This document shows positions 27,971 to 58,371 of a stretch of 64,000 bases of DNA, piece after piece. Below the pieces are notes generated by a model. It saw only the letters and a list, made by a program, of their open reading frames with translations. It was not told where the DNA came from and ran no database searches. A program made the position numbers and the translations under genes. The stretch is from Heteronotia binoei (taxonomy: Eukaryota): the NCBI RefSeq assembly GCF_032191835.1, contig NC_083224.1, forward strand, positions 141,422,001 to 141,486,000, in the 5' to 3' direction. How positions within the stretch are numbered: the stretch's first letter is position 1; each line of letters starts with the position of its first letter.

Positions 27971-28089
27971 TTATGAGGCACATCGTCGATTTTTACAAGA
28001 GCACAATGTGTGAACTTTGACTGAATGCACCAGATCTTCAGACTTCTGGTCTAGTCTCGCCCGTGTATCAAGTAAGTTTGTTGTGGAAC
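27971..28089 (-). CDS. VTG: Vitellogenin exon 35 (terminal, TAA)
   Basis: STTNLLDTRARLDQKSEDLVHSVKVHTLCSCKNRRCAS*. Confidence 0.94.
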
Positions 28090-31000
28090 CTGGAGACAAA
28101 GGAATGAAGAAGTTATTAGAATGGAAAACCTGAAAGTTGAATGAGTGCTTTTTATATCTTCATCTGAAATGTATTACACAGGGCAATTTCACTTAGAATC
28201 AGCAGGATGCATGTCCAATTCAGGATGGAACCCTAAACCAATTATGAAGGAGTACTGAGTAAGACTACTTAGGACTGGACTATCAGTGTGCACAGAACTG
28301 CTGTTAACCCATTCACGTGCATCCAGTGGCAATTTATGGTGGTGATGAACTACAAAATTTTCTGTTGCACTGTGGCGAAAACAGGAAAATGCGATTTGTA
28401 GTGCCAAACAAGTAGATATTATATTGACTTACCAGCTGGCAGACAATGCATGGCAACAGGAATGGAGACGGTAGCAGTTGGTAAGCAGCCCTCTTTACAC
28501 TGTAGCACAGACTCAACACTGAAACATTCTGATTGTTGACCCAGGTACTCGATCGTATGTTCAGGTTTCACATGTGAGTACCGCAGGTTGCAGTCTGCAA
28601 CAGGATAAACAGAATTCTTTCAATACCAGTTGAAAGACTAGAGGCTTTCATATAGTACAATACAAATGAACCTACAGTTTTACAATATAAAATTAACTTA
28701 GGTTCATCCCCTATTATTTATTGGCATTTCTAGAATGACTGTCTTAATGTTGGTTAACGTAGCATGGAAATAAGTCCAAAAAACAAGTTATCAGAGCCTG
28801 CTTACCTCCATCACAGGGTCCCTCAGTGTGCACCCAAGACTGAACAAAACCCAATGCATTTTTAGCTATACGTCCACTTGGAGTCTGGAATTCCTTTTCA
28901 CCATCAAATTGACCACATAGCCCCTGTAGTTGTTCTTGCATTGTGTTGGAGTCTACTTCAATCTTCATGAAAACAAAAACAAAACTATTTGGTGTTTTGC
29001 TTACAGTAACAATGGAAAATAGCTTATATGACTATGAGCTTGTTTTGCCACACAAGAGGTAGACAACTCATAAAAAGACTTTTGCCCTGTGAAGGCATCT
29101 GGCTTCATTATGGTGCACATAACTGTTAGGTGGATGTCAGAATGCCATCTCTTTGCTGTTCTCTGAACTGAAAGGTGGTATTCTGGCCCTGGCCACAAAT
29201 GCAACTCCTTGCCATTGCATTGCAAAGGCTTGCCTAGAAAGCACTGCAAGTTTGCAAGTCCATAGGTGAAATTTTCTCACTGCATCCCTGATACTTGCAA
29301 TACCCTGGAATCCAATGCAGATGTGTCTTACATTTGCAGAATGCCACTGAAGATGGCAATGTGCAGCCCTATCCCCCCCAAGTTCTTGCTGCCTCCCCAG
29401 AATTCACTTTATGCCCCATGTTCAAGATGACTAGAATAAATTATTGTAGGTAACCCAAACAAGTAGATATTATATTGGCTTACCAGCTTGGGGAGGGTGG
29501 AGGCCAGAAACCATTGGTGCTCTAATCCACCCTGAAACTCTTTGCTGGATTCCAGTGGCAAAAAGTTGGACAGCAGTCCACAGTCTGATCCCTCCTTCTA
29601 CCTGGGAAGCCTCTTGCTGCATCCCAGCAGGGCTGTGGTGAGAGCCTTCCCTGGTGGTGGTGAGGAAGACTGATCCCTTCCACCCACCATGTCCCAGCAA
29701 GAGACTTCCTGAGTGGGGGGAGGGGGGAGCGAGGAAGTGATCAGCATCCACAGCCAGCTGGGAGTCCATGCTCTGATCTTCCCAAAGGTCCAGACTGAAC
29801 AACTTGGATGTATTTGTATGCTGTGCACTCAGTGCCAACCCAACCACTGGAGAACTTAGTAAAAGGGAGAGCTTTTTATCTTCAAGATGTGGTTTGGGAG
29901 TTTATAAAGAAAGACTTATAAAAGCAGATACTACTCAATGTAGACTGAAGTTTTGCAGCAATATTATTCAGCTTAACAAGAAAGGAAAGGTCCCCTGTGC
30001 AAGCACCAGTCATTTCCGACTCTGGGGTGACGTTGCTTTCACATCGTTTTCACGGCAGACTTTTTATGGGGTGGTTTGCCATCGCCTTCCCCAGTCATCT
30101 ACACTTCCCTCCCAGCAAGCTGGGTACTCATTTTACCGACCTCGGAAGGATGGAAGGCTGAGTCAACCTTGGGCCGGCTACCTGAATCCAGCTTCCACCG
30201 GAATCAAACTCAGGTCGTGAGCAGAGAGTTCAGACTACAGTATTGCAGTACCGCTGCTTTACCACTCTGCACCACAGGACCCTCAGCTTAACAAAGAACA
30301 ATACCTAAATTCAAGTCAGGTTGCGTTGATTTTAATGAGCAAAGGATTTGAGTGAATTTTCCCATCATTTTTCATTGTCAGCTAGGGCCGGTCATTTGTT
30401 CTGATAATATGACAGGAAAGCACAGATTTGCTTTCTAATTTGCAATCATTTTGCAATCCTGAAAATATTCACTGTAGAGAGAAAAATACCGTGATATTGT
30501 GTCCATCATAGTAGCAAGTTAATTCATCATAAGCCTTCAGTACAAGTTGACCATTTTTCTCTGTGATGGCAATGGTTAAACCTGTAAAATAAAAGTCCAA
30601 AATGATAATTTATCTGAAAAAAATGAGGGAACAGACAAATCAAGCTAATAAAAATGTTCCTTGGATTAAATAATTGTCCCTGTTATATTGACTATTCCTC
30701 TGTATCCTGTGTATAAATCCATTCTGAGGTCTCTTTTTAGTAAGTGAAGAGATATCAATAACCTGTTCAGATTTGTGAAAACATTTTAGCTATTCTTTTC
30801 TAGCCTTCAGTTGGAAGATGACTAAATAGTGTGATTTTCTTTTTCAATGCAAGCTCTCTTCTACATTTATGTAGAGTTTTGGTTTCTTGTCTCCCAACAA
30901 TCCTGCTTAAACCTTGGCACTTACTGCTTAGCCTGCAGCTGCTTCCACACAGGAATCAATGTGGACAGCAGGATGCCCCCTCTGCTTCTGGGAGTGTTTG

Positions 31001-34000
31001 CACAATAAGCCTCCTGAGGTTTTCTTCTTTGAACCAGACAAAGGGAGTAACATCCTTTAATCTAGCTCAAGGGAAGCTTATGGGGTGACTGAAGGCAGAG
31101 TGTCTATGTTGATGCTTTACCTGCAGTCTGAATATGGTGGGAAACCAAGTCAAACTAAGCCCTGCAATCCCCTACTTCTTTTAGTCATTCTTTTAGCTTT
31201 TTTTGTTTTACTGCTGAGCTGCGATTATGTGATTATGTTCTTATGTTCGAAGAAAGAAATTGGAAGTGTCAGGCTATTAGGGGGCCCAGCACAATTGTCA
31301 TTATATCAGCACTTTTGTGTCAGTGCAGTAAAGGGAATGGGGGGGGGGGGGGAATCACCTACAGCAAGCAACCCAGAGTCAGGGCATGCCTACTCCCACC
31401 TTGTTGTTTCTACAGCACAGACATATTTTCCTACCCCTGTGTGGAAGCAGCTTCTGAAATAAAAGGTAACAGCTAGGCCCTTTACATACCATGTCCTTCA
31501 AAGCGATATGGAAGAGATGATAGAGGCACTTCAACATGATCAACTTCTACTTGATAGGCTCCTTCTTTAACTGACAATTTAATTTCTCTGATAAGAATAA
31601 AAATAAAAAGGAGAGTCAATCTGCAGTGATCACAGGTTATAGTTTTGGAATAAGAATTCCAGTAAATTCTGCTATTATAGTTGACCATGACATCTCATTA
31701 TCTTTTCCAAGTATTATTCTGCTTGCCAAAGGAGACAAGACAGCTATCCTGTTATTACATGCCACTTATAGTGAGCTGGTTCCCGTTCATTTAGTAAGAA
31801 ATCTTCCATTGGAGGAGAGACTCCACAGAGAATTTCTACTCTTGATGGGTTCAGTTAGCACTTGGATCCTAAGCCTCACTTGTGCAGCACTGTGATGGCA
31901 TTCCTCAACTGCATAGTTCATTTCCAGGACTGCCAACTTACACAAGAGCAGCATTGTTCAGGGAGCTGAAAACCTCAAAGCACCAAAGGAAAGCACTGTG
32001 CAGTAGAGGACTACCTCACAACAGACAAGCAAGGGCAAAAGCAAGGCTTTTGATCCAAACCCAGGGCTCTGTCTGTTGTACTGCACTGCTATAGATTACT
32101 CAGTGAAATTGTTCAGTTTGACAGACCCAAGGATGTAACTCAAGTCAAATCACTCCCCTGCACAATCCAGTTTAAAAAAAAAAAATACTGAAAAATTCCA
32201 GAAAGCCAAAGAAATGTTTGATTATGTTAAGAAACTTCCTAAAATGCAGCAACATGCCAAGATTAAAGACAGTAACAAATATATCATAATAGTGACTTGA
32301 ACTGACTGGATATACATGAGAATGCTGTTACTCCTCAAATCAGTTGGAGTGATCAAATTGTGGGGGTTTTCTTATTTATTTATTTACATCATTTGTTATC
32401 CATTTTTCCTCATTGAAACTCAAGAGAGATTAGACAATACAAGGAACACAGTACAGTGCATACCATGAACAGTAGAATAAAACTGCATTACACAAATAAC
32501 AATAAAACAGAAACTGTATAATGCGTAACACAAACCCTAACTCTATATACCGATTAGAAAACCAGATGTTAGTTACAAGATGCTGAACTACAGAGGGTAT
32601 AACACATCCAGTAAGAAACATGGAATAAAGGGGAGGGGGGAAAGGATGCCTAACAATTTCACAGGCAATTAAAATTAAAACGTTATTACTTTTATAGAAA
32701 TGGTCTTTCTATAGAAATCTATTTTAATACACCCCTATTCACTCTTTGCAAATATCCTCCTGACCAGCTCTATTTTACACATTCTGCAAAATGTGAGAAA
32801 TATAGGAACCTTTCTTGCATCTTACAGCCTCTGCATTAAGAGGCTGGAACTTTTCTTCACATGCTTTCACCGAACTGGATTATTGTACTGATGTAAAAAC
32901 ATTAGCTCTACTTACGGGCCATTACTAGCAAATATAAGGTCTTTTGTGATATCATGGGTGGATCGCTGCATCATCATCACAGAGAACTGCTTATAACGAT
33001 TCTTAGCCAAGATCAGAGGGCAGTTTGGAACCAGAAGGGTTTGGATTTCAGCTCCAGCAAAGGTTGTAAGATTGTTACGATACACTGAACAAATCCCTAA
33101 TAAGAGGGAACAAAATGTGAGTGTGTGCATTTGTGAAAGAGTTTCATGGTTTGATTGTTCTTAGAGCAACTAATGAACAGTATACATATTTCAAGGAATA
33201 TAATTTAATATTTGTGGTCACGGAGCAAAGTGTGCACATTTTATAGACAATTTTTGTAAGAAGATCATTTTCTAGTAATTTTAACATTTCCCAGTCTTTT
33301 TTCCAGGACAAATAACGTTAACTGGTGGGCTTTATATTCAGCAGTAAATTAGATTTTAAAATGCATTTCTGAAATGTCTTAATATGTTAATGCCACGGTA
33401 TTGTTAGATTTCAAGGAACACATTGGACATCATTATTCCAGCTAAGAAAAATAAGCATTTTAAAACTGGATCCCAGATCTTGAAGCATTCAATGTCTTTT
33501 TTTACACTCGTAATAATATGACATTGTGGGAAAGGCTGGTATATGTGAAATACATTTCCTAGATTATTTAAACATATACACATATATAACATGCATACAT
33601 ATATAAATAATATAAATCAATGGTCCCCAACCTTTTTGGCACCAGGGACCGGTTTTGTGGAAGACAATTTTTTCACGGACTGGTGGGTATGCTGGGGTTT
33701 TTGCTGCCCATCCCTGCCCCACCCCGGGGGTCGCTAAATGTGGGGTAGGTGAAATTCACTGCTGCACTACCCCTTCCACCTGCCTGGGACCAGGGCAAAT
33801 GAAAGAGGTGGTGCTTCAGACTGAGGCTGTGCTGCCTCTTTAATCCTCCTGGGACCCAGGCAGGTGAAAGGGGTGGTGCGGTGCCTATGTCTCATTCTGT
33901 GATCCAGTTGCTAACAGGCCACGGACTGGTACTGGTCCGTGGCCCAGGTGTTGGGGACCCTTAAATGAAGAGAAAATATATTTTTAAAGGTAACATTATA

Positions 34001-37000
34001 TGGAGCTGGTAAACCACTGACCTTTGTGGGTACGACCAATTATCAAATCTAGAAAGCTTAGTTGTTGCTCGACTGGGTTAAGCCTATCCTCAGAGAATGA
34101 CCATGGAAACTGAACATTTGGAAAAATGGTGGTTGTCTGTAAAGGAATATGAAAACATTAAAAATTAAGTACAGCCAATGTTCCTTCAGCACTATCTTTC
34201 TGTTTACATATCTGACAAACATAAGGATGTAACTCAAACCAAACCTACATTCTGTGCTACCCCCTCCAGCCTCCTCATGCAGTTTTCCACTTCATCGCTA
34301 TTGTATCATCTTGTATTATTGGCCAATTAAATAATATTGGCCAAGTTGCACTGTGTTCTATGCCAAAAATCATAGCATCCTCAAAACAAACAGATACATA
34401 ATATATTCCAGCATAGTCACACATGGCTTCATCCTTTCACATTTTGGAAAAGCAAACAGACAAGGTGCAAAACAGAAAAACGTTAGGGAAGCAGAACTGC
34501 GATATTCGTTTGAGTTTGTACTTTCAAATCTGTCACTATGGAAGTAACATCAAAAGAACTTACACGTGAAGTTTTGAGAATTACATCATACTTTTCTGAA
34601 GTTCTTGCAACTGTAATCATCTTAATCTGGTCATAGGGGTTTCTTTTCTCTTCCAGTGAGATGCCAAGCATGTTAAGCATTTTCAAGAAAACGCAAGAAA
34701 TTCTGGAGGGGAGAAAAAGCAAAAGGCTGGCCATAGTCCCCAAGTGTAGAAAAGACATTTTGCATGAGCTTAAACAGTTATCTCCAATGAAGTCTCAGGC
34801 ACAAGGTAAAATAATTTGTTTCTCTCTTCAGCCTGCCCATCTGCAGGGGAAAGAGGTGGGGGTGGACTAACATCTTGTTTTCCACAGGGCTTTTTTTGTA
34901 GCAGGAACTGCTTTGCAAATTAGGCCACACACCTCTGATGGAGGCAATCCGCCAAGAGTTTACAGTAGACCCTGTAAGAGGAGCTCTGTAAGCTCTTGGA
35001 GGATTGGCTATATCAGGGGGGGGTGTAGCCTATATGCAAAGGAGTTATTGCTTCAAAAGAAGCGCTGGTTTCCGATCCCTCCCAGTTACTTAATTGTCCT
35101 CAAAAGCATGTCAGAGTGCTGGCAGCAGGCATGGGAAGAAACAGCAGCCAGGCAAAACTAAGACTGCACATATGCTTCCAGTCATAAGCGTGAAAAGATC
35201 AGTTATGACCTTTGATATTTTTAATGATATATACTATAAATAAATGATTTAAATGTATACATTTACTCACTTCTTCTTTATTTCATGAGGAACTTTGGTA
35301 TATTCAACCTTCATTTGCAAAGCTGGACGATGATCAAACCAACCAATCTCAGCTAGTGCTTTAATTTTATATTGGCTTTTCTCGACATTTTTCCAAAAGG
35401 CCTGTAGGACAGAGGAGGATATTGAGAAGTTCATTAAGTGCATCATTCAATTTTGAATGTGCTTTTGGACTTGCTGCTCTCTGACAGTATATGGGATTTT
35501 TAAAGACTCACCACTACTTTGTACGGGTTCAAAAGTGCACCTTCCATGAAGGCTATTGGTTTGTTTGGTTCTGAGATCCTTGACAGAACTACTTGTATCT
35601 TGACCATAGAAGTTTCGAAGTCTTTATATCCCATAAACAGGATGCCTTTTTTTGTACCATTTGCATAGATGACACGGTAAACAGCAAGCACCGATGGTTT
35701 TTTATGCTCTCTCAGTGAACTGAGCTAAAATGAACAAAGACAAAATTATTTTAGATTCAACACCTCTTAAAGTAAGTGCACAATTAAAACTAGTTTCAGT
35801 TTAAATATAGCTATCCATGGCTTTAAAACTTCTCATTAAAAGGGCTTTTCAGTGAAAGCTTGCCTTTCTCAAGACTTACAAAAAGCCATTCCTTTCAGCA
35901 CTTAACGCAAAACTTCTAACTATCAAGGGACTCAGCTAATAGCTAAAAAGATGCTGATATTTAATTAAAGTAAATATAGAAATAAAAGTTTTAAAGCAAA
36001 GGAAAACTGCCATAGATACGTCTTCTTTCAAGATGAGCAATATCCTATGTGAAAAAATATCAGTTCTTAAATACGTAAGGTTGGATACAATGATCCACTG
36101 GTGGAAAGCACTGAATCATCATGAATCATTCCTACTTTCTCCTCCCTAAAGGAGTAATTTCTGACTCAGGAAGGTTGATTCTCAAAATGCAACACCCACA
36201 AGGAGTATAGGCTATGTAGGTCAGTGAGCTGTAGTGAGGAGTGGGAAGGATGCAATATCATCTTCCCTGCTCTTTCATCAGCAGAGCTCCACTGATGGAA
36301 GAGGGAGAAGGTAACAATTTCACCACCTCCTTCCTCCTCCTAACACTCCACCAACCAGCATGGTTACATGGATCCCATAACCCAGGAATCATTTTTCAAG
36401 GGATCAGAAGGGACTGCTGGGGAGGCAGTAGAGAAGACCATCAACTCTTTCACAGATATCCAAGATCCTTGTCCCATCTTTTTATTTCTTATATTTTTAC
36501 ACCGTGCTTCTTCTGTGGAGCTCAAGGCCAATGCACATGTGGGACCCTCTTTTTTCCCAAAGAGACAGTTTAGTATAATAGATTGGGATCAGAAAGAGTG
36601 ACCTGGTGAGCTTCACAGCTAAACTACTATCCTGATACTTTAACCATTTTGGCTCTCCACATGAATCTCTGCTCACTTACGTCATGACATGAAGCTCTTC
36701 TCCATAGTCCTTTGCCATCCAAGGCAAGAATAATGGATAAGAGCTTTCTCTGTTCAACAACCATTCTGAACAATGTGCTGGAGAATTCTGGAAAATTGAA
36801 TAGTTTTAATTGTCCTTTAGAAGAGCAATTGAAACTATTTAAACAGAATTTTGGAGATTTGCCTATTTTATTCTTTCTGCTTTTATATTTTAATATTAGT
36901 AACCATTGCTAATTATGATGCAGTTTTTTAAAATCAAGGAACATAAGTGTCTTATCTACATTTTACTGTAAACAGCTTGGATAGTCTTACTGCAGGCCCG

Positions 37001-49000: not shown

Positions 49001-52000
49001 TTATTAAAACATCAATCGGCCCCTTTTAAGTGCAGGGCAAGCCCTCTGAGGACAGTTACAGCGCCAGCTACATCAAATCCAGGTGGTCAGGTAAACTGTG
49101 AATGTTTGTATTGCACTGAAAATATCACAAGAATAGTTTCTTGGATCCCTAAACACACTGTGGTTACTAAGTTTATTTGCTCCACAGGGCACATACTTTG
49201 AACTTCATAAATATCAAAGGTGCCTTTATTAATCTTACCTTCCTCGGATCCATCCTGGCTGCCTGTCTTATGGCCAAAACAGCTTCCACTTGAATTTGGT
49301 CTGAATATTTGTTACGTTTAAACAGGACTTTCTCGAGGGGCATCATGCTGGTTCCATGAGCCGCATTGGCAAGGGACTTCAAACATAATATAATTTCTTG
49401 TTCATCTCCACTTCGGAGTGCCTCTGCTAAGCGATCATGGAAATGCTACCAAGAACAAAAGAGAGATGCAAATAAGCATACAAACTATTCCTCATACAAT
49501 ACATGTCGCTGCCTTTTTCAGTGACAAAGTAATGAATAGTTGCATGTAAATGCCAGTACTATGATCATTGGTTGGGTGTATATGCTGTTTCAGAATATGC
49601 TGTTATGTTCTGCAGTTATGAAGACCCTGGTGGGCTGGAAGAGATCTTAATATCATCCCACTCCATTTACACATAATCCCTCTGCAATGCAATCAATATT
49701 TATTAATAAACTAAAGCCCTCATTTCAAGCATGCAATTGATCATTTCCAAGGAAATAACAAAATTAATTCCATGATTAAAATTAAAAGTTGTATCCTTCT
49801 ACAGAAGCCAGTAACATTCCCTGCATCTAGCCAGCTGCCTCTTCCTTTACATTCTTATAATCAGTATTAGTAATGACTCTGATGGGCATCTTTGAAATTA
49901 ATAGTTTAAGTTTTTTAATTGTCATTTTCTGCTAGAACTGAATAAAGAAACTATTCTATGTCTCCAGAAAATGAAATATATTAAATTAGCCTGAAGCAAG
50001 GACACACACCTTGAGAATTTCTTTGGCATGAGATGGAGACTGAGAAAGACATCTGGAAACCAGAGCTCCATGTGCCAGGTTAGCTGCCATGTTAAGCCAG
50101 TAATTTCTCCTGATTATGGGGCTCTCCATTATTTCCTGTTCAAGTGAAAAATAATGAGAAAAAGTAAATGCATATGGTGGAACTTGATGGAAGATTTGTC
50201 TTGTTATAGGTGCAACAACCATTACTTTGAATTGCATTCTGCTGACTTCCTTGTAAAGTGACTGCACACAATTTTATTTTGATACAACAAATGATGATGT
50301 CACATGTACTCACTGCTGCCAATGAAGCTGCACGTTCACTAGGGGTTGCAAAATGGAAGGCTATGGGAATAAACCGAAGTAGTTCAGAGAAGCTCAGTTG
50401 GATGTCATGGTCACGGATTGCAATTTTGAGGAGCTCCAGTGAATTATCACTGCCTGCCATAGCAACTACATGTAGCAGAGCAAATCTGCAATGAGCAAAA
50501 AGGAACATTTAAGTTGCATTCTTTGCCCTCCTTCACAAAAAAAACTGATAAGATTTGGGGGCCAAGCCTGAGACTTTATTGCCCAGGTAGCAAAGGATTT
50601 AGGCTTGGTACCAGTCAGTATGCCAGAATATAATGCAGCATAAGAGTCAGCCAACATACCTGGCATGAGGCTTACTTGCAACCTTCCTTAAGACAGTGAC
50701 CAGGTCATTAAGACTTCCTCTACGGACCAGTTCGACAAGCTGTAGATACTTTTTAGGAGTTTCTGCTTTGTTGCCTGCTGGGTTGCTCTGGTCTAATTCT
50801 TGCATTTTCTCCATAAGCTGTTAGATTCAATAGAAGACAACAATAGCTAGAGTATATTCATTACAACCAATCAGAACAAGTCCTCTCTTGCTGCCTTTAC
50901 AGAAAGTGGAAACACTCGGTGTGTTAAACATTCTCTACCTGTTCTGCAATGTTGCGGGTCTCCATCACAGTAACTGCCATCCGGGGCTGGTCTGGAAATT
51001 CATAATAAATGTTTTCACGGCCCTCATCCTGAGCTTGTGGCCAGAGTGCTTGTTGTTGTTGTCGTTGCTGCTGCTGCTGCCGCCGCTGTTCAGGATTATC
51101 AATTTTCACCCCAGTCAGAGTCAGCTCTTGTCTGGAAGGGAACAGGAAACCACAGATATCATGAAAGAGTAATGGTTTGATCCTAGATTACCTTGAGAAA
51201 ATCAAGAAGACCTCAAAGCAGCTAAGCCAACAGCAGGCAAGAACAGGTGTATTTGTCAGTCTACATGGCTGAGATTGAATAGATGCAATACTGACCCACT
51301 CAAAGTTCATGGAAATGCAGCTATTGATGTCATAGAATACAGGCTGTATTAGAATCAGTAAGGGCAATAGCCAAGCTACCTTTATCTGTCCCCAACGTCA
51401 GCTTTCCCCACTTCCATCAGCCTCTTCCCAGGTAAAGTCTGGCCAGGCAGAATGGTGGCTGGCACTGGGTTGGGCTGTGTAGCCCAAGTCACACAGTGGC
51501 TGCCACTGGGCCAGGCCAGGCTGGACTGAGTAGTGCTGTGACTGGCATTGCCAGGACAGAACAGACCAAGTTATGTGACTAGAGAGTCTCTGGTGGTAGC
51601 TGTCAGGAGACATGACAAAGTGAGGGGGGTGCAGGAACTTTCCCAGAGCTATTCTGGTCTTTCAGTTCACTCCTGCTCTCCCCACCCCCCCGCCCCAACC
51701 TCTCAAGGTTCTGCTTTACAGAAATCAAAGCTCGGAAGGCTTATTCTTATGCTATGAAGCAGCTGCTGAGGGCCTAAAAACACATAAAATTTCCCCCTGG
51801 TCCTCCTGGGGTCTACATATTCAACTGTTTATTCCATGTCAGAAATTTAAATCCAGGCACACATATGCCTATTTGGATTGGGATGATGCCCCCATTATAC
51901 TGAGCAGAAGCAGCCCCAGGGAAGCACTATTTGTTCCATTGTAGAAATCTATGTGGACTCCATCACAGCACATGTGGCAGACAGCACCTGAAGGGCCATT

Positions 52001-53436
52001 CCAGGTTGAGTACATAGCTGTGGAGGGGTAAGGGGAGGATAAAGCCTGATCTGGTCCTGATCTGAATTGGGTCTGTGCATGCATAAGACTAAGTTCTCAG
52101 CGTAAAACTTGTAGTATACATTTGATCATGCAGACCTGAGGTGGACCTGAGGAAAAAGCATGATATCTAGTTAGGTTCTTAGTGATCACTCTTTCAATAA
52201 GGGCTTTTGATGCATTTACGGAACAAAATACAGCATAAAAGATGTATAATTTGTATGGTAATTATATGTTCTCTCAGCATGTTAACAGTGAGCAGCTGAT
52301 TTCAAGGGGGGGCATGTAGACAGACAAATACACCTGTTCTTGCCTGCTATTGGCTTAGCTTCTTTGAGGTCACATAAGTGCTGGTTAGCATTGGTCTATT
52401 CAGTGCTGCTATATAATTGGAATAAGACAGAACTGGGATTTTACAATTTATGAGCAACTTCTGTTCAGTTTAACTGTACACATGTTATTGTTTACAGGTT
52501 TTTAAATGATGGCTTGTTGGTTAAGCAGTTGGTTAAGCTTGTTGGTTAAGCAGTTAAGGCACACAAATTATACCTACTATTATATTTAGTTAATTACTGT
52601 ATTTAAAGTCCACCTTTCTGACTGAGCCTGAAGGCAGTGTAAGTCAAAATAGGAAGATTCCTTAAATTAATGAAGTGCATGACCCAGTTTTCACAAAATC
52701 TCAGTCTTGCCTAGAACTCCTGGAACCATGAGTTTGTTTTGTTTTTTAAAAGGTGTTCTACTTACGTGGCTTTCAGAATTACAGGAGTCTCAGAGTCACT
52801 GCCTGGAGAAACTTTGTATAGTTCATTTGCTTCGGCTTTTCCAATAAGAATAGTATTATTTTCAAATTTCACTTTGTGTTCTGATACCAAAACTCCTACA
52901 AGCAACCTGTTTTTCTAAACCACAGAAAAAGGCACTTTTAGTAAGTGTGAATGCAGACTAATTTTACACTAATTTGACAGCAAGCACATTCACAGCATTC
53001 TTACCATTGGGCAGAATGGAAGAGCATGGATATAGGACATTCCAATATTCTGTACCACTTTCTTCTTGCAATTCATCAAATTCTTGCTCTTAGTAATGGT
53101 GATCCAATCACTCTTCCCATTTTCATTGACTGTGTACTTAGCATCACAGTCACCTTGTATACCACTCTTTAAAATAAAGATACAAAAGTTACAAAAACAC
53201 ATATTTCAGCATTAATAAGGAGGGGCATGAGCAGAAGTGGAATGTGTATCAGAAAAAAAAATGAAAATACCATTAGATATGTAGGAAAATTTCATAGCTG
53301 TAAATTGATGTTTCATTTCTAGTTCCTGGTATTCATTTTTTTCTTATTTTACATCAAACAGAAATAAATCTGGCAGATGACTGAATAGTCCCTAAACTTT
53401 TAGCAGTACTTTTTGATTGATGGATTTCATAGTGAG

Positions 53437-53512
<76 letters not shown>

Positions 53513-56500
53513 ATCTATCTATCACTAGATAGTGAATATAACACTACAAACACAAATTATTTGGTTCCAATGCTGTCATTTAACAATTGTAACAATAAAT
53601 TAGGACCTTCAATAAAAAATAATCTGATCGATTAATTTAACTATTCAACAAGAAACCATCCAGCAGGTATGTAAGTGTAAACAGTAAAGTGAGGTATTTC
53701 ACTGCAGAAGTAAATCCCACCCCTTGAAAAAGTCAGTGCAAGTGTACCTTAAATGAAAGAAACAAACCTCTTGTACTTCATACGTCTTGTCCTCCTTGTA
53801 TGTTATTTTGAACATACCCACGACTCCTCTAATGATGTTCCTACAAAATCTAGGGGTATTTCTTGCAAAATAAATCTTCCCAATATTCTTGCCATACATT
53901 TCAATTTCAGTGGGGAAATGGCAGCATTGTTCAAATTCCTGAGTTTGCTTGGGAGAACGAACAAATGATTTCCCAATACAGTCTTCCACTTTTGGATTTG
54001 AAAGCTGAGGACAAAATTGAGGGGAAAATTATTTCCATCGGAAAAAAATTCCATTTGAAATTTAAAGTTTATTGACATTTCCTTGATTCATGCTTCCAGC
54101 TGGAAATGGTATTAATACTAATGAATTTGTCCCCTGCTCTGCCATCAGATGGTTAAATTGTTTTACATCATGTTTCACCAGTTTTAATTGTCTAACTTTG
54201 TTGTAATCTGCCCTTAGCCCACTTGCANNNNNNNNNNNNNNNNNNNNNNNNNNNNNNNNNNNNNNNNNNNNNNNNNNNNNNNNNNNNNNNNNNNNNNNNN
54301 NNNNNNNNNNNNNNNNNNNNNNNNNNNNNNNNNNNNNNNNNNNNNNNNNNNNNNNNNNNNNNNNTCAGTATTGGCTCTTTCAGCAGGAAAGACTAAACAG
54401 TAATGAATTTGGATTGGATTTTGTCCTTCTATATTATATACTGTTTCTCATATGAGAAACAAGTTAGTTAACATACACTAATTGTTTGGATTCTATGCGC
54501 CACAAGCAGAGAGTCTGTTAAAATAAACTGAGCCAAATTTCGCTTGGCTCACCCAAGAGGAAGATTGCCCCCAATCTTTCCCCCCCTCCCCACACAAACA
54601 CCTTCTTCTTGCATCCTCCTAGGCCATATTTTGTAAGCTATTTCCTTCTGACTCCTTCCACTAACTTCAATATTAATGCTTTACAAATACTGATTATCAT
54701 AGTAAACTTTCCTAAGAAAAGCACAAAATTATTTAACACTATTCTGATAGCTACCAATAAAGACATCAGACATCTGTATGTACTAAGACTAAAAATGATC
54801 CTCCCTCAAAAGTTAGGATTTGGAAAGAAATTTGACCTCCTCTCATTTTTAATGTAGCCCTAATTTGGATGGTCCAGGCTAGGATGATCTTATCATATCT
54901 CCACTGCGTAACAGGGTTAGCCTTGATTAGTATTTGGATGGGAGGCCACCAAGAAGACCAGGGTTGCTACGCAGAGGCAGGCAGTGTCAAACCACCTTAG
55001 TTTTTGCCTTGAAAATCCAGTGAGGGATTCTTGTACAGTCAGCTGCAGCTTCACAGCATTTTTACACGCATACACACACACATACTTCTAAAGTGCAAGT
55101 GACTGGAGGTCACTGGTGGTGGCCTCAGGTTGGCTCCCCACTAGTTATAATTCCAAAGGGGTAGCCAGTACTAAAGAAACAGTACTAAATATCCCAGTTT
55201 CAATTTCCTTTCCCTGACTCTTTCTTCCTGTTCTGTCCATCTCCTTCTCATCAGACTCTCAGGGAAGCTATTGCCCCTGACTTCACCAGTTACCCACTCA
55301 GCCCCACACCCATCCTCTGCTGCCTCTCACATAGTTGTTCTTCAGACAGCCATGTCCTGCCTCTACTGCAGGCCTCCCAGCCTCCTCTCTCCTTCTGCTG
55401 GCAAAGGGCATGCACATTGCAGGGCACTTGGCAGCAAACAGCAAACACTATCCCTCTGTTGATAGTTGGTTGCCATAAGCCAGGTTCAGGTATCTGGGCA
55501 GCTTCCTTGCATGCAGAAAGGCTGTGTGACTGTGGCTATGGCCCTGGGAGGGAAGGTGCCATTTGTATCTTGACTGAGGTAATTTCATGTGGTATCCTCA
55601 CAGGAGTGGTCATTCAACTGGAACCTTTTTTGAGACAGTTTTGTTTTAAATTCATATATGAATTATTTCCACAGTTCTGCAATGCTTACCATGAGACTGA
55701 ACCGTTTGGTGTTAATTCCATACAGCTTTAAATCTAAGGCAAACTTCAGCCCAGCGTTTCCTGATGTCTCATCTTCCAGTCCAGTTAGGGCCTCACCTTT
55801 GTAGCTGTACAAGAGCGTCTTCCCAACATCAACCTGAAATTCTGCAGAAAGGGATAGGCAGATCATTGAACAATGAGTGGCAGTGTTTACCAGATTATGG
55901 AACATCTCAGACTTCCTTCAGAATATTTCAGAAACATCTTTTGAGACTGATGTGTAATGCAAATGTATTTAATTAAACGATTAATCATTTAAAACCAGAT
56001 AGTAACCCTTACTGCATTTATACAGTGCTTTGGAATGCTCCAAGTAGGCCATAGATATTACACTATTGTGAACCCTAGAAGTACCCTGTGAGGTAGCTTT
56101 ATAATGTTATCATAACTGAAGATGGGGGGGGGGGGGTTGAAGAAGAGAAGCTTGCTAAATTTCATTTCATTTTATTCGATTTATATCCCGCCCTCCCCAC
56201 CAAGGCAGCTCAAGGTGGCTCACAACATAAAATTCTAACAATAAGATTAATGAATATAAAATACATTAAATAGTTTACAGCAGTTAAAACAAGAAAACAA
56301 GAAAACGATCTATCAATGTGCTATCCTACAACCTTCCTTTGGGTTTTTCAGGTACCGGTCAGTTATATGCCAACCAGAAGAGGACTGTCTTACAGGCCCT
56401 GCGGAACTGCCCCCAAGGTCCCACAGGGCCCTCACCTCTTCCGGTAGCTGGTTCCACCGGCAAGGGGCTGTAATCGAAAAGGCCCTGTCCCTGGTTGACT

Positions 56501-58371
56501 TCAGACGGGCCTCCTTCGGCCCAGGGATTGTTAGTAGATTTTAAGAACCAGATCTAAGCACTCCCTGGGGAATATGTGGGGAGAGATGGTCCCTAAGGTA
56601 GGCAGGTCCTAGGCCATATAGGGCTTCAAAGGTAATAACCAGCACCTTGTACCGAACCCTGTATATTATTGGCAGCCAGTGCAGTCCCCGGAGCCCCGGC
56701 TGAATGTGCTCCCACCTTGTTCATATAGCACCATTTTAGTGCTATATGAACAAATAATAAATATAAGATATTGGGAAAATGAACAAATTATTTTCCTCAC
56801 AAAGTGAGCTATAGAAATTTCTGGGGTGGGGGGAGATATGTTCAAGTTGTGAAGGATTAGGATCTAACATTCCTTGTGTTCAATTCTGTCTTTTTTCTTC
56901 CCCAATGTTTTTGGTTTTGGGGTATCCGTCCCTTTCTCTTTTTCATTCTATTATTCTATCTTCTGGCTTCTTTCCTCTGCTGGATCCTCTGCTTTCAAAC
57001 TGCCCACACCTCACCAAGAAGATCCTGCCTAGAACTTAAAAAAAAAAGTGCTGGTGCATGTTGCCAAGCTTTTGAGTCAGAAGTTACAGCATCTCCATTT
57101 GCTTTTTAAGCCTCTGGCTAAGCATTCAGTTAGAGGCTGCAATTTCTTTGTCAGGGAGGGGAGGCGGGGCAAGTTATACAGACATGGGTCCAACTCAAAG
57201 ATGAGAACCTGAAGAACCTGGGACCCAGAAGAGCTTCTTGGTATCATCTCCCATGAAGCAATTGCATTCATTTTGTCTGGGCTCTCTCAGGGGCCTGGAG
57301 GTCACTGGTGGTGGCCTCAGGTTGGCTCCCCACTAGTTATAATTCCAAAGAGGTAGCCAGTACTAAAGAAACAGTACTAAATATCCCAGTTTATTAGGAG
57401 CCCTAATAACATTGCCTCTCTAGTCGTCTGAGTCCTCGCTTTAATTGCCGCAACTCCTGGTTGTACCAAGGTGCCGGCTTTGGACGAGGGCGCAGAGGAC
57501 GCCTAGGTGCGATTTCATCGATGGCTCTGGAGAGTCTGTCATTCCAAGACTCCACCAGGTCATCCAAGGAATCGCCAGGAGGCCAGGGATCCTGTAGAGC
57601 CGTCTGGAACCGTTCTGGGTCCATCTGGCTCTGTGGGCGAGCTAAAATATGCTTGCCACCTAAACGGGCTTAGGGTGGAACATCCACACTAGCCTTGAGG
57701 GCATAGTGGTTCGACCATGGCACTGCTTCAGCAGTAATATCGTCCACTAAATCTGCCCAGAGCATTCACAGCAGAGGGACCATTTGAACTGGGAACTTTT
57801 TCAGTTCAGTTCCTTAAAGAGCCAGAAGAGTGCAGTGCTTAGAGAGGGTCATACTAGTGTCTAGGAGATCCATACTGGACCTCCCCCCCACATACACACT
57901 GCCTTGGAAGCTTGGTGGGCAACCTTGGACCTGTCATACACCCTCACTCTAACCTTCCTCCCTGGGTGGCTGGGAGGAGAAAACAAAGGAGGAGGGAATA
58001 GCACAAACCACCCTGAGCTCCTAAAATTTACTGAAAGTGATTTACTAAAAATGATAAAATTAAAATTTACTAATAGTGATTATACTATAGCAATTGAACT
58101 AATCTTTGTCCCCAGAGATCTTACTGCCCTGAAAGTCACCTCAACAAATGTGCTATTAAATACTAAAAGCAAACTGTGTACTTACGGGGAGCTGAGTTCA
58201 CACTCCCTGGTGGAAAGAAAATGGATATGTTAGTGTGAGTATAACAGTAAAGGAGAACATTTGAGTAATAAATTATATTGTGGCTAAACTATACAAAATT
58301 CTACCATGGATACAAGAAAACATGAACTTACCCGCAACGGTGAGCACGAGAGCAAGTATGATTCCCTTCAT
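27971..58371 (-). CDS. VTG: Vitellogenin, complete 35-exon gene (VTG2/VTG3-cluster paralog; paralog number not assignable from sequence alone)
   Basis: 35 GT-AG exons with phases summing to 5628 nt (multiple of 3, one terminal TAA). Domain order: signal peptide, lipovitellin heavy chain, phosvitin polyserine, lipovitellin light chain, vWD (beta'), Cys-rich C-terminus. The 40/21/152-nt first exons and overall layout match the recalled 35-exon bird/amphibian VTG. Adjacent to CTBS as in the known amniote SSX2IP-VTG2-VTG3-CTBS cluster. Confidence 0.95.
28433..28594 (-). CDS. VTG: Vitellogenin exon 34
   Basis: CNLRYSHVKPEHTIEYLGQQSECFSVESVLQCKEGCLPTATVSIPVAMHCLPA(G); 162 nt. Confidence 0.94.
28806..28962 (-). 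CDS. VTG: Vitellogenin exon 33 (vWD xGLCG motif)
   Basis: IEVDSNTMQEQLQGLCGQFDGEKEFQTPSGRIAKNALGFVQSWVHTEGPCDG(D); 157 nt. Confidence 0.93.
29980..30282 (-). mobile_element. Sauria-type SINE with 12-bp TSD (vitellogenin intron 32)
   Basis: TSD TCAGCTTAACAA at 29968-29979 and 30283-30294; (CCTTT)n tail. Confidence 0.9.
30490..30581 (-). CDS. VTG: Vitellogenin exon 32
   Basis: LTIAITEKNGQLVLKAYDELTCYYDGHNIT; 92 nt. Confidence 0.87.
31490..31587 (-). CDS. VTG: Vitellogenin exon 31
   Basis: EIKLSVKEGAYQVEVDHVEVPLSSLPYRFEGH(G); 98 nt. Confidence 0.87.
32916..33096 (-). CDS. VTG: Vitellogenin exon 30 (start of vWD/beta' domain)
   Basis: ICSVYRNNLTTFAGAEIQTLLVPNCPLILAKNRYKQFSVMMMQRSTHDITKDLIFASNG(P); 181 nt. 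Confidence 0.9.
33618..33963. mobile_element. hAT-Charlie-like MITE
   Basis: CAATGGTCCCCAACCTTTTTGGCACCAGGGACCGG ... GTTGGGGACCC ends. Confidence 0.75.
34022..34136 (-). CDS. VTG: Vitellogenin exon 29
   Basis: TTTIFPNVQFPWSFSEDRLNPVEQQLSFLDLIIGRTHK(G); 115 nt, strong pyrimidine tract, phases fit. Confidence 0.78.
34564..34702 (-). CDS. VTG: Vitellogenin exon 28
   Basis: ISCVFLKMLNMLGISLEEKRNPYDQIKMITVARTSEKYDVILKTSR; 139 nt. Confidence 0.88.
35271..35401 (-). CDS. VTG: Vitellogenin exon 27
   Basis: AFWKNVEKSQYKIKALAEIGWFDHRPALQMKVEYTKVPHEIKK(K); 131 nt. Confidence 0.88.
35512..35724 (-). CDS. VTG: Vitellogenin exon 26 (lipovitellin light chain)
   Basis: LSSLREHKKPSVLAVYRVIYANGTKKGILFMGYKDFETSMVKIQVVLSRISEPNKPIAFMEGALLNPYKVV; 213 nt. 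Confidence 0.88.
36993..37122. mobile_element. hAT-like MITE with 8-bp TSD
   Basis: TIR CAGGCCCGTAGC / GCTACGGGGCTG; TSD TCTTACTG / TCTTATTG. Confidence 0.8.
37262..37465 (-). CDS. VTG: Vitellogenin exon 25 (second polyserine exon)
   Basis: KIAQHGSASSNRRPGSHGSESSSTSTSESSSRSSRKSRSTSSSSSSSESSRKSSSSSSSSSSSSSSLE|GTGAGT; 204 nt. Confidence 0.85.
39140..39184 (-). CDS. VTG: Vitellogenin exon 24 (45-nt small exon)
   Basis: TTTTCTAAG|ENPEDIHLTPHLQLK|GTAATA, phase 0-0; supported by splice signals and position only. Confidence 0.6.
40350..41150 (-). CDS. VTG: Vitellogenin exon 23 (phosvitin polyserine domain; 300 nt are N)
   Basis: QSPIKTEKKSSS..SSSSSDDTSESS..SSRSGSSSSSRSSGSSSDS..GRKSTRG; AGC/AGT-rich; N runs 40679-40840 (162) and 40950-41087 (138) keep frame. 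Confidence 0.88.
41472..41596 (-). CDS. VTG: Vitellogenin exon 22
   Basis: STCAEAQMIELEVDLGNRIPDKTMELLSRESQAEVDLKLQK; 125 nt; donor AAG|GTATAT chosen because it fits the phase of exon 23. Confidence 0.75.
41687..41897 (-). CDS. VTG: Vitellogenin exon 21
   Basis: QKTTSEKK..RENAFLTEVMKRITGEHEFTMDILP; 211 nt. Confidence 0.85.
42450..42600. repeat. AT-rich degenerate tandem repeat
   Basis: GAAAGTGG(C/T)TAAGTAGATCAATTA(C/T)GTTATTAATATTATT twice, plus partial units. Confidence 0.7.
42874..43018 (-). CDS. VTG: Vitellogenin exon 20
   Basis: HDSYLVARNSAEPNVEKKIPLVSKKSEASLQDEHFVSEERVSREDNLA; 145 nt. Confidence 0.82.
43261..43446 (-). CDS. VTG: Vitellogenin exon 19
   Basis: VTGHGAISMGIVANEWQRTMEISGDFLLHVPLKATITIDVKDKSYKIGFPPVCKKTELVAA(K); 186 nt. 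Confidence 0.9.
43595..43682 (-). CDS. VTG: Vitellogenin exon 18
   Basis: RAVVSPPVDSNFHPSELATLKLSVDINA(A); 88 nt. Confidence 0.87.
44405..44590 (-). mobile_element. 5S-rRNA-derived SINE fragment
   Basis: CTAAGCAGGGTTGGCCCTAGTGGGTACTTGGGTGGG (5S box-like) joined to a Sauria-like 3' part. Confidence 0.55.
44779..44965 (-). CDS. VTG: Vitellogenin exon 17
   Basis: NLSEEYFQPLINKVFRNLQEGISGQVVSPVAFPEIRRMFPNNLGMPLEVGATGMFIADISAN(V); 187 nt. Confidence 0.92.
45052..45138 (-). CDS. VTG: Vitellogenin exon 16
   Basis: VPGVYPESQDQSISFSMFDKEIAYLIKPK; 87 nt. Confidence 0.78.
45506..45589 (-). CDS. VTG: Vitellogenin exon 15
   Basis: ARLNSGILDELLKGRSHFNQKISKAEKV; 84 nt, ACAG| and |GTATGT. Confidence 0.75.
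45705..45829 (-). CDS. VTG: Vitellogenin exon 14
   Basis: QRGIGFIEKVITESTAKNLFPSSTMLTTQLLLPGGKTNLFE; 125 nt. Confidence 0.87.
46510..46857 (+). mobile_element. L2 LINE 3' end
   Basis: TTCCGCAGGGCCTGCAAGACC..GCCGCCCTGAGCCTGCTTCGGCGGGGAGGGCGGGATATAAATAAA(TTAC)n. Confidence 0.85.
47307..47404 (-). CDS. VTG: Vitellogenin exon 13
   Basis: SSACKFALKLLKVRSFKMQYYYSKPNIFKFYD; 98 nt. Confidence 0.92.
47929..48221 (+). mobile_element. Sauria-type SINE
   Basis: ..GCTGCAGTAC..GAGTTCGATCCC..GGTTGACTCAGCCTTTCATCCTTCCGAGGTCGG..GGGGACTAC(ATTT/CTTT). Confidence 0.85.
48279..48496 (-). CDS. VTG: Vitellogenin exon 12
   Basis: GQELLTVAFMEREYCTLARIMACVSLLEMNISLPLVVTMAKVAANDNDAQFQRFVISHMTEVAGLRVPQYAD(V); 218 nt. 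Confidence 0.92.
49239..49445 (-). CDS. VTG: Vitellogenin exon 11
   Basis: HFHDRLAEALRSGDEQEIIICLKSLANAAH..IQVEAVLAIRQAARMDPRK; 207 nt. Confidence 0.92.
50010..50135 (-). CDS. VTG: Vitellogenin exon 10
   Basis: EIMESPIIRRNYWLNMAANLAHGALVSRCLSQSPSHAKEILK; 126 nt. Confidence 0.88.
50314..50485 (-). CDS. VTG: Vitellogenin exon 9
   Basis: FALLHVVAMAGSDNSLELLKIAIRDHDIQLSFSELLRFIPIAFHFATPSERAASLAA; 172 nt. Confidence 0.88.
50660..50817 (-). CDS. VTG: Vitellogenin exon 8
   Basis: LMEKMQELDQSNPAGNKAETPKKYLQLVELVRRGSLNDLVTVLRKVASKPHA(R); 158 nt. Confidence 0.88.
50939..51131 (-). CDS. VTG: Vitellogenin exon 7 (with Gln-rich insertion)
   Basis: QELTLTGVKIDNPEQRRQQQQQRQQQQALWPQAQDEGRENIYYEFPDQPRMAVTVMETRNIAEQ; 193 nt. 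Confidence 0.88.
52766..52914 (-). CDS. VTG: Vitellogenin exon 6
   Basis: KNRLLVGVLVSEHKVKFENNTILIGKAEANELYKVSPGSDSETPVILKA(T); 149 nt. Confidence 0.85.
53005..53166 (-). CDS. VTG: Vitellogenin exon 5
   Basis: SGIQGDCDAKYTVNE..ITKSKNLMNCKKKVVQNIGMSYIHALPFCPM; 162 nt. Confidence 0.93.
53437..53522. repeat. (TATC)n microsatellite, about 21 units
   Basis: Read directly. Confidence 0.95.
53768..54004 (-). CDS. VTG: Vitellogenin exon 4
   Basis: LSNPKVEDCIG..IGKIYFARNTPRFCRNIIRGVVGMFKITYKEDKTYEVQE; 237 nt. Confidence 0.9.
54862..55070 (+). mobile_element. 5S-rRNA-derived SINE
   Basis: TAGTATTTGGATGGGAG (5S C-box-like) followed by GCAGAGGCAGGCA..AAACCACC. Confidence 0.55.
55103..55200 (+). repeat. 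98-bp direct repeat, copy A (vitellogenin intron 3)
   Basis: 97/98 identical to 57295-57392. Confidence 0.95.
55690..55841 (-). CDS. VTG: Vitellogenin exon 3
   Basis: FQVDVGKTLLYSYKGEALTGLEDETSGNAGLKFALDLKLYGINTKRFSLM; 152 nt. Confidence 0.9.
56160..56716 (-). mobile_element. L2 LINE, 5'-truncated 3' end
   Basis: Reverse complement of L2 3' coding end and UTR (GGGAGCACATTCAGCCGGGGCTCCGGGGACTGCACTGGCTGCC..GGGAGGGCGGGATATAAATC). Confidence 0.85.
57295..57392 (+). repeat. 98-bp direct repeat, copy B (vitellogenin intron 2)
   Basis: 97/98 identical to 55103-55200. Confidence 0.95.
57395..57760 (-). mobile_element. L2 LINE internal ORF2 fragment
   Basis: MDPERFQTALQDPWPPGDSLDDLVESWNDRLSRAIDEIAPRRPLRPRPKPAPWYNQELRQLKRGLRRLERQ. 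Confidence 0.85.
58186..58206 (-). CDS. VTG: Vitellogenin exon 2 (21-nt microexon)
   Basis: CCAG|GG AGT GTG AAC TCA GCT CCC C|GTAAG, after a 125-nt intron. Confidence 0.85.
58332..58371 (-). CDS. VTG: Vitellogenin exon 1 (signal peptide)
   Basis: MKGIILALVLTVA(G), 40 nt, G|GTAAG. Confidence 0.95.

What the first reader, a model, noticed from the sequence alone, without database searches (positions are those of the whole stretch)
27971..58371. The intact vitellogenin looks like a rapidly evolved paralog: the dead neighbour is as canonical as the live gene
Hand comparison to the recalled chicken VTG2 sequence: over a 42-aa block of exon 12 the pseudogene matches 21 residues and keeps the VIFETRP motif, while the live gene matches 17 (SLLEMNI). 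Over exon 13 the counts are 16 versus 15 of 32. The live gene nevertheless has 35 clean exons with no stops. Inference: accelerated protein evolution under retained function (possible neofunctionalisation, such as altered lipid or mineral cargo or a non-yolk role). The two copies are old paralogs, not a recent duplication.
Basis: partly seen in the sequence, partly recalled or inferred. Interest (0 to 1): 0.7.

Follow-up and report, generated by a model that had tools for sequence, protein, structure and literature searches.

The report
Gecko yolk gene evolving almost neutrally
The intact vitellogenin (yolk-protein) gene of this gecko is kept open, spliceable and estrogen-wired in three gecko lineages, yet its amino acids change about as fast as silent sites, which is very unusual for a working gene.

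Summary
The gene is real.

**Gaps**
- The gap at 54228-54364 is intronic.
- The two N runs lie inside the serine-rich phosvitin exon. Its frame cannot be read here, but that exon is open and in phase in two other geckos.

- It holds for exon 12. The dead copy still matches lamprey lipovitellin, and the live copy does not.
- It fails for exon 11, where the live copy is the more canonical.

**Rate of change**
- The same gene lies at the same locus in Gekko japonicus and Eublepharis macularius, intact in both.
- Across the three species dN/dS is about 1 (0.75-0.87 by counting, 1.04-1.11 by likelihood), on every branch and along the whole protein.
- A published estimate for working vitellogenins is about 0.24.
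- About 41-47 stop mutations would be expected without constraint, and none is seen.
- Cysteines, the promoter, the TATA box and an estrogen-response element are conserved.
- Two small RNA libraries hold most of the exon words.

The "rapid evolution under retained function" reading is therefore supported. The "paralog" and new-function ideas are not. No bird, turtle or other squamate sequence could be fetched, so whether this rate is peculiar to geckos is untested. An earlier scan note had already flagged the dead neighbour on this same window.

The parts
63673..63685 (.). Perfect palindromic estrogen-response element (GGTCAnnnTGACC), 5.3 kb upstream of the ATG, inside a conserved non-coding block
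   Evidence: 0 mismatches; the block aligns in Gekko, which keeps the ERE exact, and in Eublepharis, which has two changes in one half-site. The count of such sites in the window is not above chance; position and conservation are the argument.
58730..58742 (.). Proximal ERE-like site (1 mismatch), about 360 nt upstream of the ATG
   Evidence: conserved in all three geckos, with an adjacent TGGTCA half-site.
58372..58500 (-). Core promoter with TATA box (CCCTATAAAATACCC)
   Evidence: 93.8% identity to Gekko and 87.7% to Eublepharis over 130 nt. This is higher than the coding exons (87% and 75%).
58332..58371 (-). Exon 1: ATG and signal peptide MKGIILALVLTVA
58186..58206 (-). Exon 2: 21-nt mini-exon (GSVNSAP)
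   Evidence: 22 nt of identical acceptor context in Eublepharis (L001:10165-10185). Also found in Gekko. Absent from NCBI's Eublepharis model.
55690..55841 (-). Exon 3
54228..54364 (.). Assembly gap inside intron 3; does not touch coding sequence
   Evidence: no exon here in either relative, and the phases of exons 3 and 4 match.
53768..54004 (-). Exon 4
53005..53166 (-). Exon 5, holding ITKSKNLMNC, which lies in the N-terminal region where the receptor-binding domain is placed
   Evidence: Pfam Vitellogenin_N 40.4 bits. The motif is conserved in the three geckos.
52766..52914 (-). Exon 6
50939..51131 (-). Exon 7, with a poly-Gln tract
   Evidence: Length differs among species by multiples of 3.
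50660..50817 (-). Exon 8
50314..50485 (-). Exon 9
50010..50135 (-). Exon 10
49239..49445 (-). Exon 11
   Evidence: Pfam 44 bits; lamprey lipovitellin 34.5 bits.
48279..48496 (-).
   Evidence: Pfam 22.7 bits; no lamprey match.
47307..47404 (-). Exon 13
45705..45829 (-). Exon 14
45509..45589 (-). Exon 15
45052..45138 (-). Exon 16
44779..44965 (-). Exon 17
43595..43682 (-). Exon 18
43261..43446 (-). Exon 19 (open beta-sheet domain)
42874..43018 (-). Exon 20
41687..41897 (-). Exon 21
41472..41596 (-). Exon 22
40350..41150 (-). Exon 23: serine-rich phosvitin exon, holding the N runs 40950-41087 and 40679-40840. Its frame is not verifiable in this window.
   Evidence: The orthologous exon is open from acceptor to in-phase donor in Eublepharis (about 300 codons) and in Gekko (266 codons, 53% Ser).
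37262..37465 (-). Exon 24: second serine-rich exon
35512..35724 (-). Exon 25 (start of the beta-sheet shell domain)
35271..35401 (-). Exon 26
34564..34702 (-). Exon 27
34022..34136 (-). Exon 28
32916..33096 (-). Exon 29 (start of the von Willebrand D domain)
31490..31587 (-). Exon 30
   Evidence: phase chain only, with no relative to compare.
30490..30581 (-). Exon 31
   Evidence: phase chain only.
28806..28962 (-). Exon 32 (GLCG motif of the vWD domain)
28433..28594 (-). Exon 33 (Cys-rich C-terminal part)
27971..28089 (-). Exon 34, with stop codon TAA at 27973-27971
27772..27777 (-). AATAAA polyadenylation signal, about 195 nt after the stop (coordinates approximate to a few bases)
22305..22610 (-). 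Dead copy: stop-free stretch holding the remains of its exon 11
   Evidence: no Pfam match; lamprey 15.8 bits.
22122..22301 (-). Dead copy: exon 12 (VIFETRP)
   Evidence: Pfam 24.9 bits; lamprey 21.2 bits, E 0.0026.
21471..21629 (-). Dead copy: stretch holding exon 13 (SIACTIALVRF...YYSKVI)

Best explanation
This is the working VTG2-type vitellogenin of a gecko: an estrogen-driven, secreted yolk precursor. The same gene sits at the same locus in Gekko japonicus and Eublepharis macularius.

Selection strictly preserves the gene's ability to be made and processed. That covers the promoter, the signal peptide, all splice sites, the open frame, the cysteines and a core of about one fifth of the residues.

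Selection places almost no net constraint on which amino acid occupies the other positions. The protein therefore diverges at about the silent rate (dN/dS about 1) on every gecko branch sampled. That spans roughly a hundred million years or more (inferred from dS about 0.34, not measured).

A mixture model adds a class of about a quarter of sites with dN/dS about 3. The regime is therefore probably relaxed constraint on a bulk nutrient carrier plus some diversifying selection, not decay.

Shown: intactness in three species, the rates, and promoter conservation.

Inferred: liver expression, the yolk role, and the cause of the high rate.
For: **Identity and structure**
- Pfam domains are colinear: Vitellogenin_N, open beta-sheet, beta-sheet shell, VWD.
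- The Eublepharis ortholog matches lamprey lipovitellin 1lsh_A at E 3.6e-69.
- The model has 34 phase-consistent exons with no stop.
- There is a polyadenylation signal.

**Orthology**
- The whole locus, introns included, aligns colinearly to L004 (Gekko, about 80-83% identity) and L001 (Eublepharis, about 72-77%).

**Intactness**
- Exons 1-22 hold 1056, 1052 and 1076 codons with no stop in the three species.
- The phosvitin exon is open and in phase in both relatives.
- All exon length differences are multiples of 3.

**Rates**
- Counting method (NG86): dN/dS 0.75, 0.87 and 0.85 for the three pairs.
- Likelihood: 1.04-1.11 under five codon-frequency models. This never differs from 1. It is rejected against 0.3 by 2dlnL of 250-290.
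- Branch values are 0.9, 0.97 and 1.2.
- C-terminal exons 25-29: 1.08.
- Codon positions 1, 2 and 3 are equally diverged, close to the intron rate.
- Non-degenerate sites diverge at least as fast as four-fold sites.
- The estimator recovers 0.25, 0.5 and 1 on simulated data.
- The reference value for working vitellogenins is about 0.24 (PMC2267819).

**Selection for function**
- 41-47 stop gains are expected without constraint and none is seen, P about 1e-18.
- Cysteines are 12 of 14 invariant.
- The promoter is more conserved than the coding sequence.
- The TATA box and an ERE-like site are conserved, and a perfect ERE lies in a conserved upstream block.
- RNA runs X1 and X2, only 88-132 million letters each, hold 0.15-0.17 of the words of a stretch that is 0.22 exon. 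A third run of the same study holds 0.01.

**Positive-selection class**
- M2a against M1a gives 2dlnL of 39.
- The value is 17.4 with gamma rate variation and 35.4 on a gap-free subset.
Against: - Only three species were compared, and no control gene from the same trio was available.
- No bird, turtle, crocodilian or non-gecko squamate vitellogenin could be fetched. It is therefore unknown whether dN/dS near 1 is peculiar to geckos or normal for squamate vitellogenins.
- In exons 9-11 the gecko proteins are no further from two unidentified vitellogenin fragments (L003, P0005) than those two are from each other.
- Pfam scores of gecko exons are only a little below those of L003.
- The literature value of 0.24 comes from very deep branches, where dS is saturated.
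- Expression rests on shares of sampled words only.
- Exons 30-34 have no relative to compare.
- The frame through the two N runs is unread.
- Site-model tests on three taxa are prone to false positives.
Confidence: 0.72

Rival explanations
1. This is an ordinary VTG2 ortholog with an ordinary vitellogenin rate. Yolk proteins are fast evolving everywhere, and the distance from chicken simply reflects deep time. All squamate vitellogenins would then look the same.
For: - In exons 9-11 the geckos are equidistant from the unidentified fragments L003 and P0005 (about 35%, against 32% between those two).
- Pfam scores of gecko exons 5 and 11 are close to those of L003.
- NCBI names the orthologs vitellogenin-2-like.
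Against: - dN/dS about 1 with equal divergence at all three codon positions is far from the roughly 0.24 reported for working vitellogenins.
- It is also unusual for any intact gene.
- A value of 0.3 is rejected by 2dlnL above 245.
Confidence: 0.15
2. The gene is no longer needed, for example because another vitellogenin does the work. It is drifting towards loss and is merely unbroken so far.
For: - dN/dS is not different from 1.
Against: - About 41-47 stop gains would be expected, and none occurs in three lineages.
- All indels are multiples of three, and all splice sites are kept.
- Cysteines and about 20% of sites are invariant.
- The promoter is more conserved than the exons.
- RNA libraries hold most exon words.
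Confidence: 0.03
3. This is a neofunctionalised paralog with a non-yolk role or altered cargo.
For: - There is a positive-selection class with dN/dS about 3 at about 25% of sites.
- Exon 12 has lost its likeness to lamprey lipovitellin in the window species.
- Another scan note reports a lost disulfide in the vWD domain (s1-328545, not tested here).
Against: - The domain set is complete, including a phosvitin region of normal size.
- The ITK-x-KNLMNC stretch in the N-terminal receptor-binding region is conserved.
- Estrogen-response elements are present.
- The locus is shared and positional, not a new duplicate.
- The rate is uniform along the protein rather than focused on one domain.
Confidence: 0.07

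Closest known systems
Chicken VTG2 (VIT2), the major avian yolk precursor, one of the tandem VIT2/VIT3 pair
   Same: - Same domain order and nearly the same exon plan: 34 exons found here against 35 published (PMC2267819).
- A tandem partner, here dead.
- Estrogen-response elements upstream.
- Colinear C-terminal vWD and Cys-rich region (the last point from my memory of the chicken sequence, not from a tool).
   Different: - One exon fewer was found here.
- dN/dS is about 1 among geckos, against about 0.24 reported for working VIT genes.
- The direct distance to chicken could not be measured with a tool-supplied sequence.
Eublepharis macularius 'vitellogenin-2-like' (P0001, locus L001) and Gekko japonicus 'vitellogenin-2-like' (P0006, locus L004)
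   Same: - Orthologous locus with alignable introns, identical exon phases and splice sites, and a conserved promoter.
   Different: - Protein identity is only 56% (Eublepharis) and 76% (Gekko).
- The public models are split in two at the phosvitin exon.
- The Eublepharis model also omits the 21-nt exon 2.
Lamprey lipovitellin, PDB 1LSH
   Same: The N-terminal 680 residues of the gecko ortholog match it at E 3.6e-69. Exon 11 of the window gene matches at 34.5 bits.
   Different: Exon 12 of the window gene no longer matches it at all. The dead neighbour's exon 12 still does.
Platypus VIT2, the lone working vitellogenin beside dead copies (PMC2267819, PMC8081666)
   Same: A working vitellogenin next to the remains of lost paralogs.
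   Different: Platypus VIT2 evolves at dN/dS about 0.24, significantly below 0.5. The gecko gene is at about 1.

Membership tests
Vertebrate vitellogenin (large lipid transfer protein family) | N-terminal lipoprotein domain (Vitellogenin_N) followed by the open beta-sheet domain | tested here: met
   exon-wise Pfam matches are colinear along profile positions 4-590. PF09172 matches at exon 19. The ortholog P0001 carries PF01347 and PF09172 and matches 1lsh_A at E 3.6e-69.
Vertebrate vitellogenin (large lipid transfer protein family) | Serine-rich phosvitin region between the two lipovitellins | tested here: met
   serine-rich exons at 41150-40350 and 37465-37262. The Gekko ortholog exon has 266 codons and is 53% Ser. 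Part of the window exon is unread (N runs).
Vertebrate vitellogenin (large lipid transfer protein family) | Beta-sheet shell domain, von Willebrand D domain and Cys-rich C-terminus | tested here: met
   PF09175 at exon 25 and PF00094 at exon 32. These are single-exon scores below Pfam's whole-protein cut-off. The GLCG motif and terminal CSC motif are present.
Vertebrate vitellogenin (large lipid transfer protein family) | Signal peptide and an exon plan of about 35 exons with a 21-nt exon 2 | tested here: met
   34 exons found, including the mini-exon. This is one fewer than the published 35.
Vertebrate vitellogenin (large lipid transfer protein family) | Estrogen-induced liver expression and deposition in yolk | tested here: inconclusive
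   ERE sites and a conserved promoter are present. Two small RNA libraries hold most exon words. Tissue, sex and yolk content are unknown.
VTG2 (VIT2) orthology group of amniotes | Position in the tandem VTG2/VTG3 pair | tested here: inconclusive
The minus-strand order is live VTG, dead VTG, then a GH18 gene taken for CTBS. The tandem origin of VIT2/VIT3 is from PMC2267819. I could not read the chicken gene order with a tool.
VTG2 (VIT2) orthology group of amniotes | Groups with bird, turtle and squamate VTG2 in a gene tree | not tested
   No such sequences could be fetched. The three word searches and the one representative search returned only gecko proteins and unlabelled fragments.
Unitary pseudogene | Frame-breaking mutations, lost splice sites, or a promoter drifting at the neutral rate | tested here: not met
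   none in the live gene in any of three species. dN/dS near 1 is the only pseudogene-like trait.

The most novel reading that the evidence does not exclude
The gecko VTG2 is under pervasive diversifying selection: about a quarter of its sites have dN/dS near 3, sustained across Gekkota. That would make it a vertebrate yolk precursor caught in an arms race or conflict, rather than a merely relaxed gene. Candidate drivers are agents that exploit yolk uptake, an immune role of vitellogenin, or maternal-offspring conflict.
Probability: 0.25. Interest if true: 0.8.

Novelty: new variant of a known kind. Interest (0 to 1): 0.6.

Why it matters
Vitellogenins are treated as conserved, essential yolk precursors. 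Their loss is used to date shifts in reproductive mode.

A vitellogenin that stays intact and regulated for roughly a hundred million years while its residues turn over at the silent rate bears on three points:
- It asks how much of the lipovitellin fold is needed to make yolk.
- It warns that dN/dS near 1 is not proof of gene death in this family.
- It gives a testable case for telling relaxed constraint on a storage protein from diversifying selection.

It also bears on gecko reproductive biology. One neighbouring yolk gene is already dead, and published statements say reptiles keep three working copies (PMC8081666).

Tried and rejected
**Searches for comparison sequences**
1. Fetching bird, turtle and other squamate vitellogenins failed.
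   - The one representative search, with exon 11 (69 aa), returned only P0001 and short unlabelled fragments.
   - Three word searches with P0001 returned only the two gecko proteins. They used the whole protein, residues 300-1000, and residues 1-104.
Exons were searched one by one by reference. The joined coding sequence was used only inside local scripts for codon statistics and was not printed.

**Reads**
   - No splice junction or expression level could be read from reads.

**Exon and dead-copy hunts**
4. I looked for a 35th exon between exons 24 and 25. A three-species alignment shows no conserved open exon with conserved splice sites.
5. I looked for more exons of the dead copy with a gecko profile and with tblastn. 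Only exons 11-13 were recognisable.

**Controls**
6. No control gene for dN/dS was available. The fetched loci of the two relatives hold nothing but this gene and non-coding flanks.
7. A relative-rate test with the unlabelled fragments L003 and P0005 was uninformative. All are about 35% identical, and their species are unknown.

**Gaps**
8. The N runs were neither filled nor looked up.

Full report
**What is there.** Both vitellogenin copies lie on the minus strand. Exon-wise Pfam scans place the four expected domains in order between 55.9 kb and 28.8 kb: Vitellogenin_N, the open beta-sheet, the beta-sheet shell and the von Willebrand D domain. Downstream lie the eroded second copy (recognisable exons 11-13 at 22610-21471) and four colinear GH18 exons at 7131-672, taken for CTBS.

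**Relatives that could be reached.** The representative search with exon 11 found P0001. Sources name it vitellogenin-2-like of Eublepharis macularius. A word search added P0006, vitellogenin-2-like of Gekko japonicus. Their loci are L001 and L004. They align to the window colinearly through exons, introns and upstream sequence, at about 72-77% and 80-83% identity. They are therefore the same locus in other geckos. PDB holds only lamprey lipovitellin.

**Gene model.**
- I mapped P0001 exactly onto L001 to get exon phases.
- I projected those exons onto the window.
- I chained the C-terminal exons by phase and splice sites.
- The result is 34 exons from 58371 to 27971, with 1859 codons, a TAA stop, no internal stop and AG/GT at every junction.
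- An AATAAA signal follows about 195 nt after the stop.
- A 21-nt exon 2 (58206-58186) has an identical acceptor context in Eublepharis and is missing from the public model.
- I found no 35th exon.

**Gaps, tested first.**
- The gap at 54228-54364 is in intron 3. Neither relative has an exon there, and the phases of the flanking exons match.
- The runs 40950-41087 and 40679-40840 lie inside the serine-rich phosvitin exon.
- All three frames are open there, so the frame cannot be proved from this window.
- Only the serine frame connects exons 22 and 24.
- The orthologous exon is open from acceptor to in-phase donor in Eublepharis and in Gekko.
- I did not fill or look up the unread letters.

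- The chicken counts could not be checked against a tool-supplied chicken sequence, and they are small.
- I used lamprey lipovitellin as an objective outgroup.
- Exon 12: the dead copy scores 21.2 bits (E 0.0026) and the live copy has no match.
- The Eublepharis exon 12 scores 16.7 bits.
- Exon 11: the live copy scores 34.5 bits and the dead one 15.8 bits.
- Pfam agrees. Exon 12 gives 24.9 bits (dead) against 22.7 (live). Exon 11 gives no match (dead) against 44.0 (live).

**The stronger evidence: rates among geckos.**
- Exons 1-22 are intact in all three species.
- Over 1045 gap-free codon columns, protein identity is 76% to Gekko and 56% to Eublepharis.
- Counting gives dN/dS of 0.75, 0.87 and 0.85 for the three pairs.
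- My own three-taxon likelihood code recovers 0.25, 0.5 and 1.0 on simulated data.
- That code gives 1.04-1.11 under five codon-frequency schemes. The value is never different from 1 and is rejected against 0.3 by 2dlnL of 250-290.
- Branch values are 0.9, 0.97 and 1.2, without significant heterogeneity.
- Divergence is the same at codon positions 1, 2 and 3 (0.138, 0.136 and 0.142 for window against Gekko). It is close to the intron rate of 0.21.
- Non-degenerate sites diverge at least as fast as four-fold sites.
- The pattern holds in every 150-codon window.
- It holds on a gap-free, low-complexity-free subset.
- It holds in C-terminal exons 25-29, at 1.08 over 259 codons.
- Brawand et al. 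report about 0.24 for working vitellogenins (PMC2267819).

**The gene is nevertheless under selection.**
- With 3.5% of random point changes giving a stop, 41-47 stop gains would be expected over the three branches in these 1045 codons alone. None is seen.
- All exon length differences are multiples of three, and splice sites are conserved.
- Cysteines are the best-kept residues, 12 of 14 invariant.
- The proximal promoter is more conserved than the exons: 87.7% against 75% to Eublepharis.
- The promoter has a conserved TATA box and an ERE-like site at 58730-58742.
- A perfect ERE at 63673-63685 lies in a conserved upstream block.
- The ERE count alone is not above chance.
- Two small RNA libraries from one study hold 0.15-0.17 of the sampled words of a stretch that is 22% exon. 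A third library holds 0.01. This fits a very abundant, sample-specific transcript.

**Relaxed or positive selection?**
- A nearly neutral mixture (M1a) puts 20% of sites at dN/dS 0 and 80% at 1.
- Adding a class above 1 (M2a) improves the fit by 2dlnL of 39, with about 25% of sites at about 3.2.
- With gamma rate variation the improvement is 17.4 (p = 0.0002).
- On the clean subset it is 35.4.
- With three taxa this is suggestive only. Just five sites reach a posterior of 0.9.

**What remains open.**
- Whether this rate is special to geckos is untested.
- In exons 9-11 the gecko proteins are about as far from two unlabelled vitellogenin fragments as those two are from each other.
- Pfam scores are only slightly lower than for one of them.
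- The tree, branch tests, control genes and expression data listed under next steps would decide this.

**Verdict.**
- The gene is an intact, regulated VTG2-type yolk precursor shared by geckos.
- Its protein sequence turns over at about the silent rate.
- The paralog and new-function ideas are not supported.

Noticed in passing
window 63200-64000 (ERE at 63673-63685): A non-coding block 5 kb upstream of the vitellogenin start is conserved in Gekko and Eublepharis. It holds a perfect palindromic estrogen-response element and is a candidate distal enhancer.
   Followed up: partly
L001:10165-10185, L001:28638 onwards, and L004:23381-24178: The public gene models of Eublepharis and Gekko split this vitellogenin into two proteins at the phosvitin exon. 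That exon is open and in phase in both. The Eublepharis model also skips the 21-nt exon 2.
   Followed up: yes
window 50939-51131 (exon 7): A poly-glutamine tract sits inside the N-terminal lipoprotein domain. It is about 10 Q in the window species and over 25 Q/K in Eublepharis, and its length varies by multiples of three.
   Followed up: no
window 56316-56720 and 11360-11710; 57406-57669 and 19137-19295: Interspersed repeats are shared between intron 2 of the live gene and the region of the dead copy and CTBS: a SINE-like element and a reverse-transcriptase-like ORF. These repeats produced the only strong live-versus-dead matches in the first self-comparison.
   Followed up: no
window 32916-33096 (exon 29): In the first vWD exon the window species reads ILAKNRYKQF and Eublepharis reads ILAEDIRQPKQF. 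I recall a DC cysteine here in chicken VTG2. This fits the separate scan note on a lost disulfide (s1-328545). My comparison rests on memory of the chicken sequence.
   Followed up: no
window 672-7131 minus strand (and up to about 14.2 kb): GH18 (chitobiase-like) exons with a DGINIDIE catalytic motif lie in the same orientation as both vitellogenin copies. This fits CTBS as the downstream neighbour.
   Followed up: partly
window 22301-22407: In the dead copy the remains of exons 11 and 12 are only about 100 nt apart. The live gene has a 740-nt intron there, so part of the dead copy's intron or exon 11 has been deleted.
   Followed up: no
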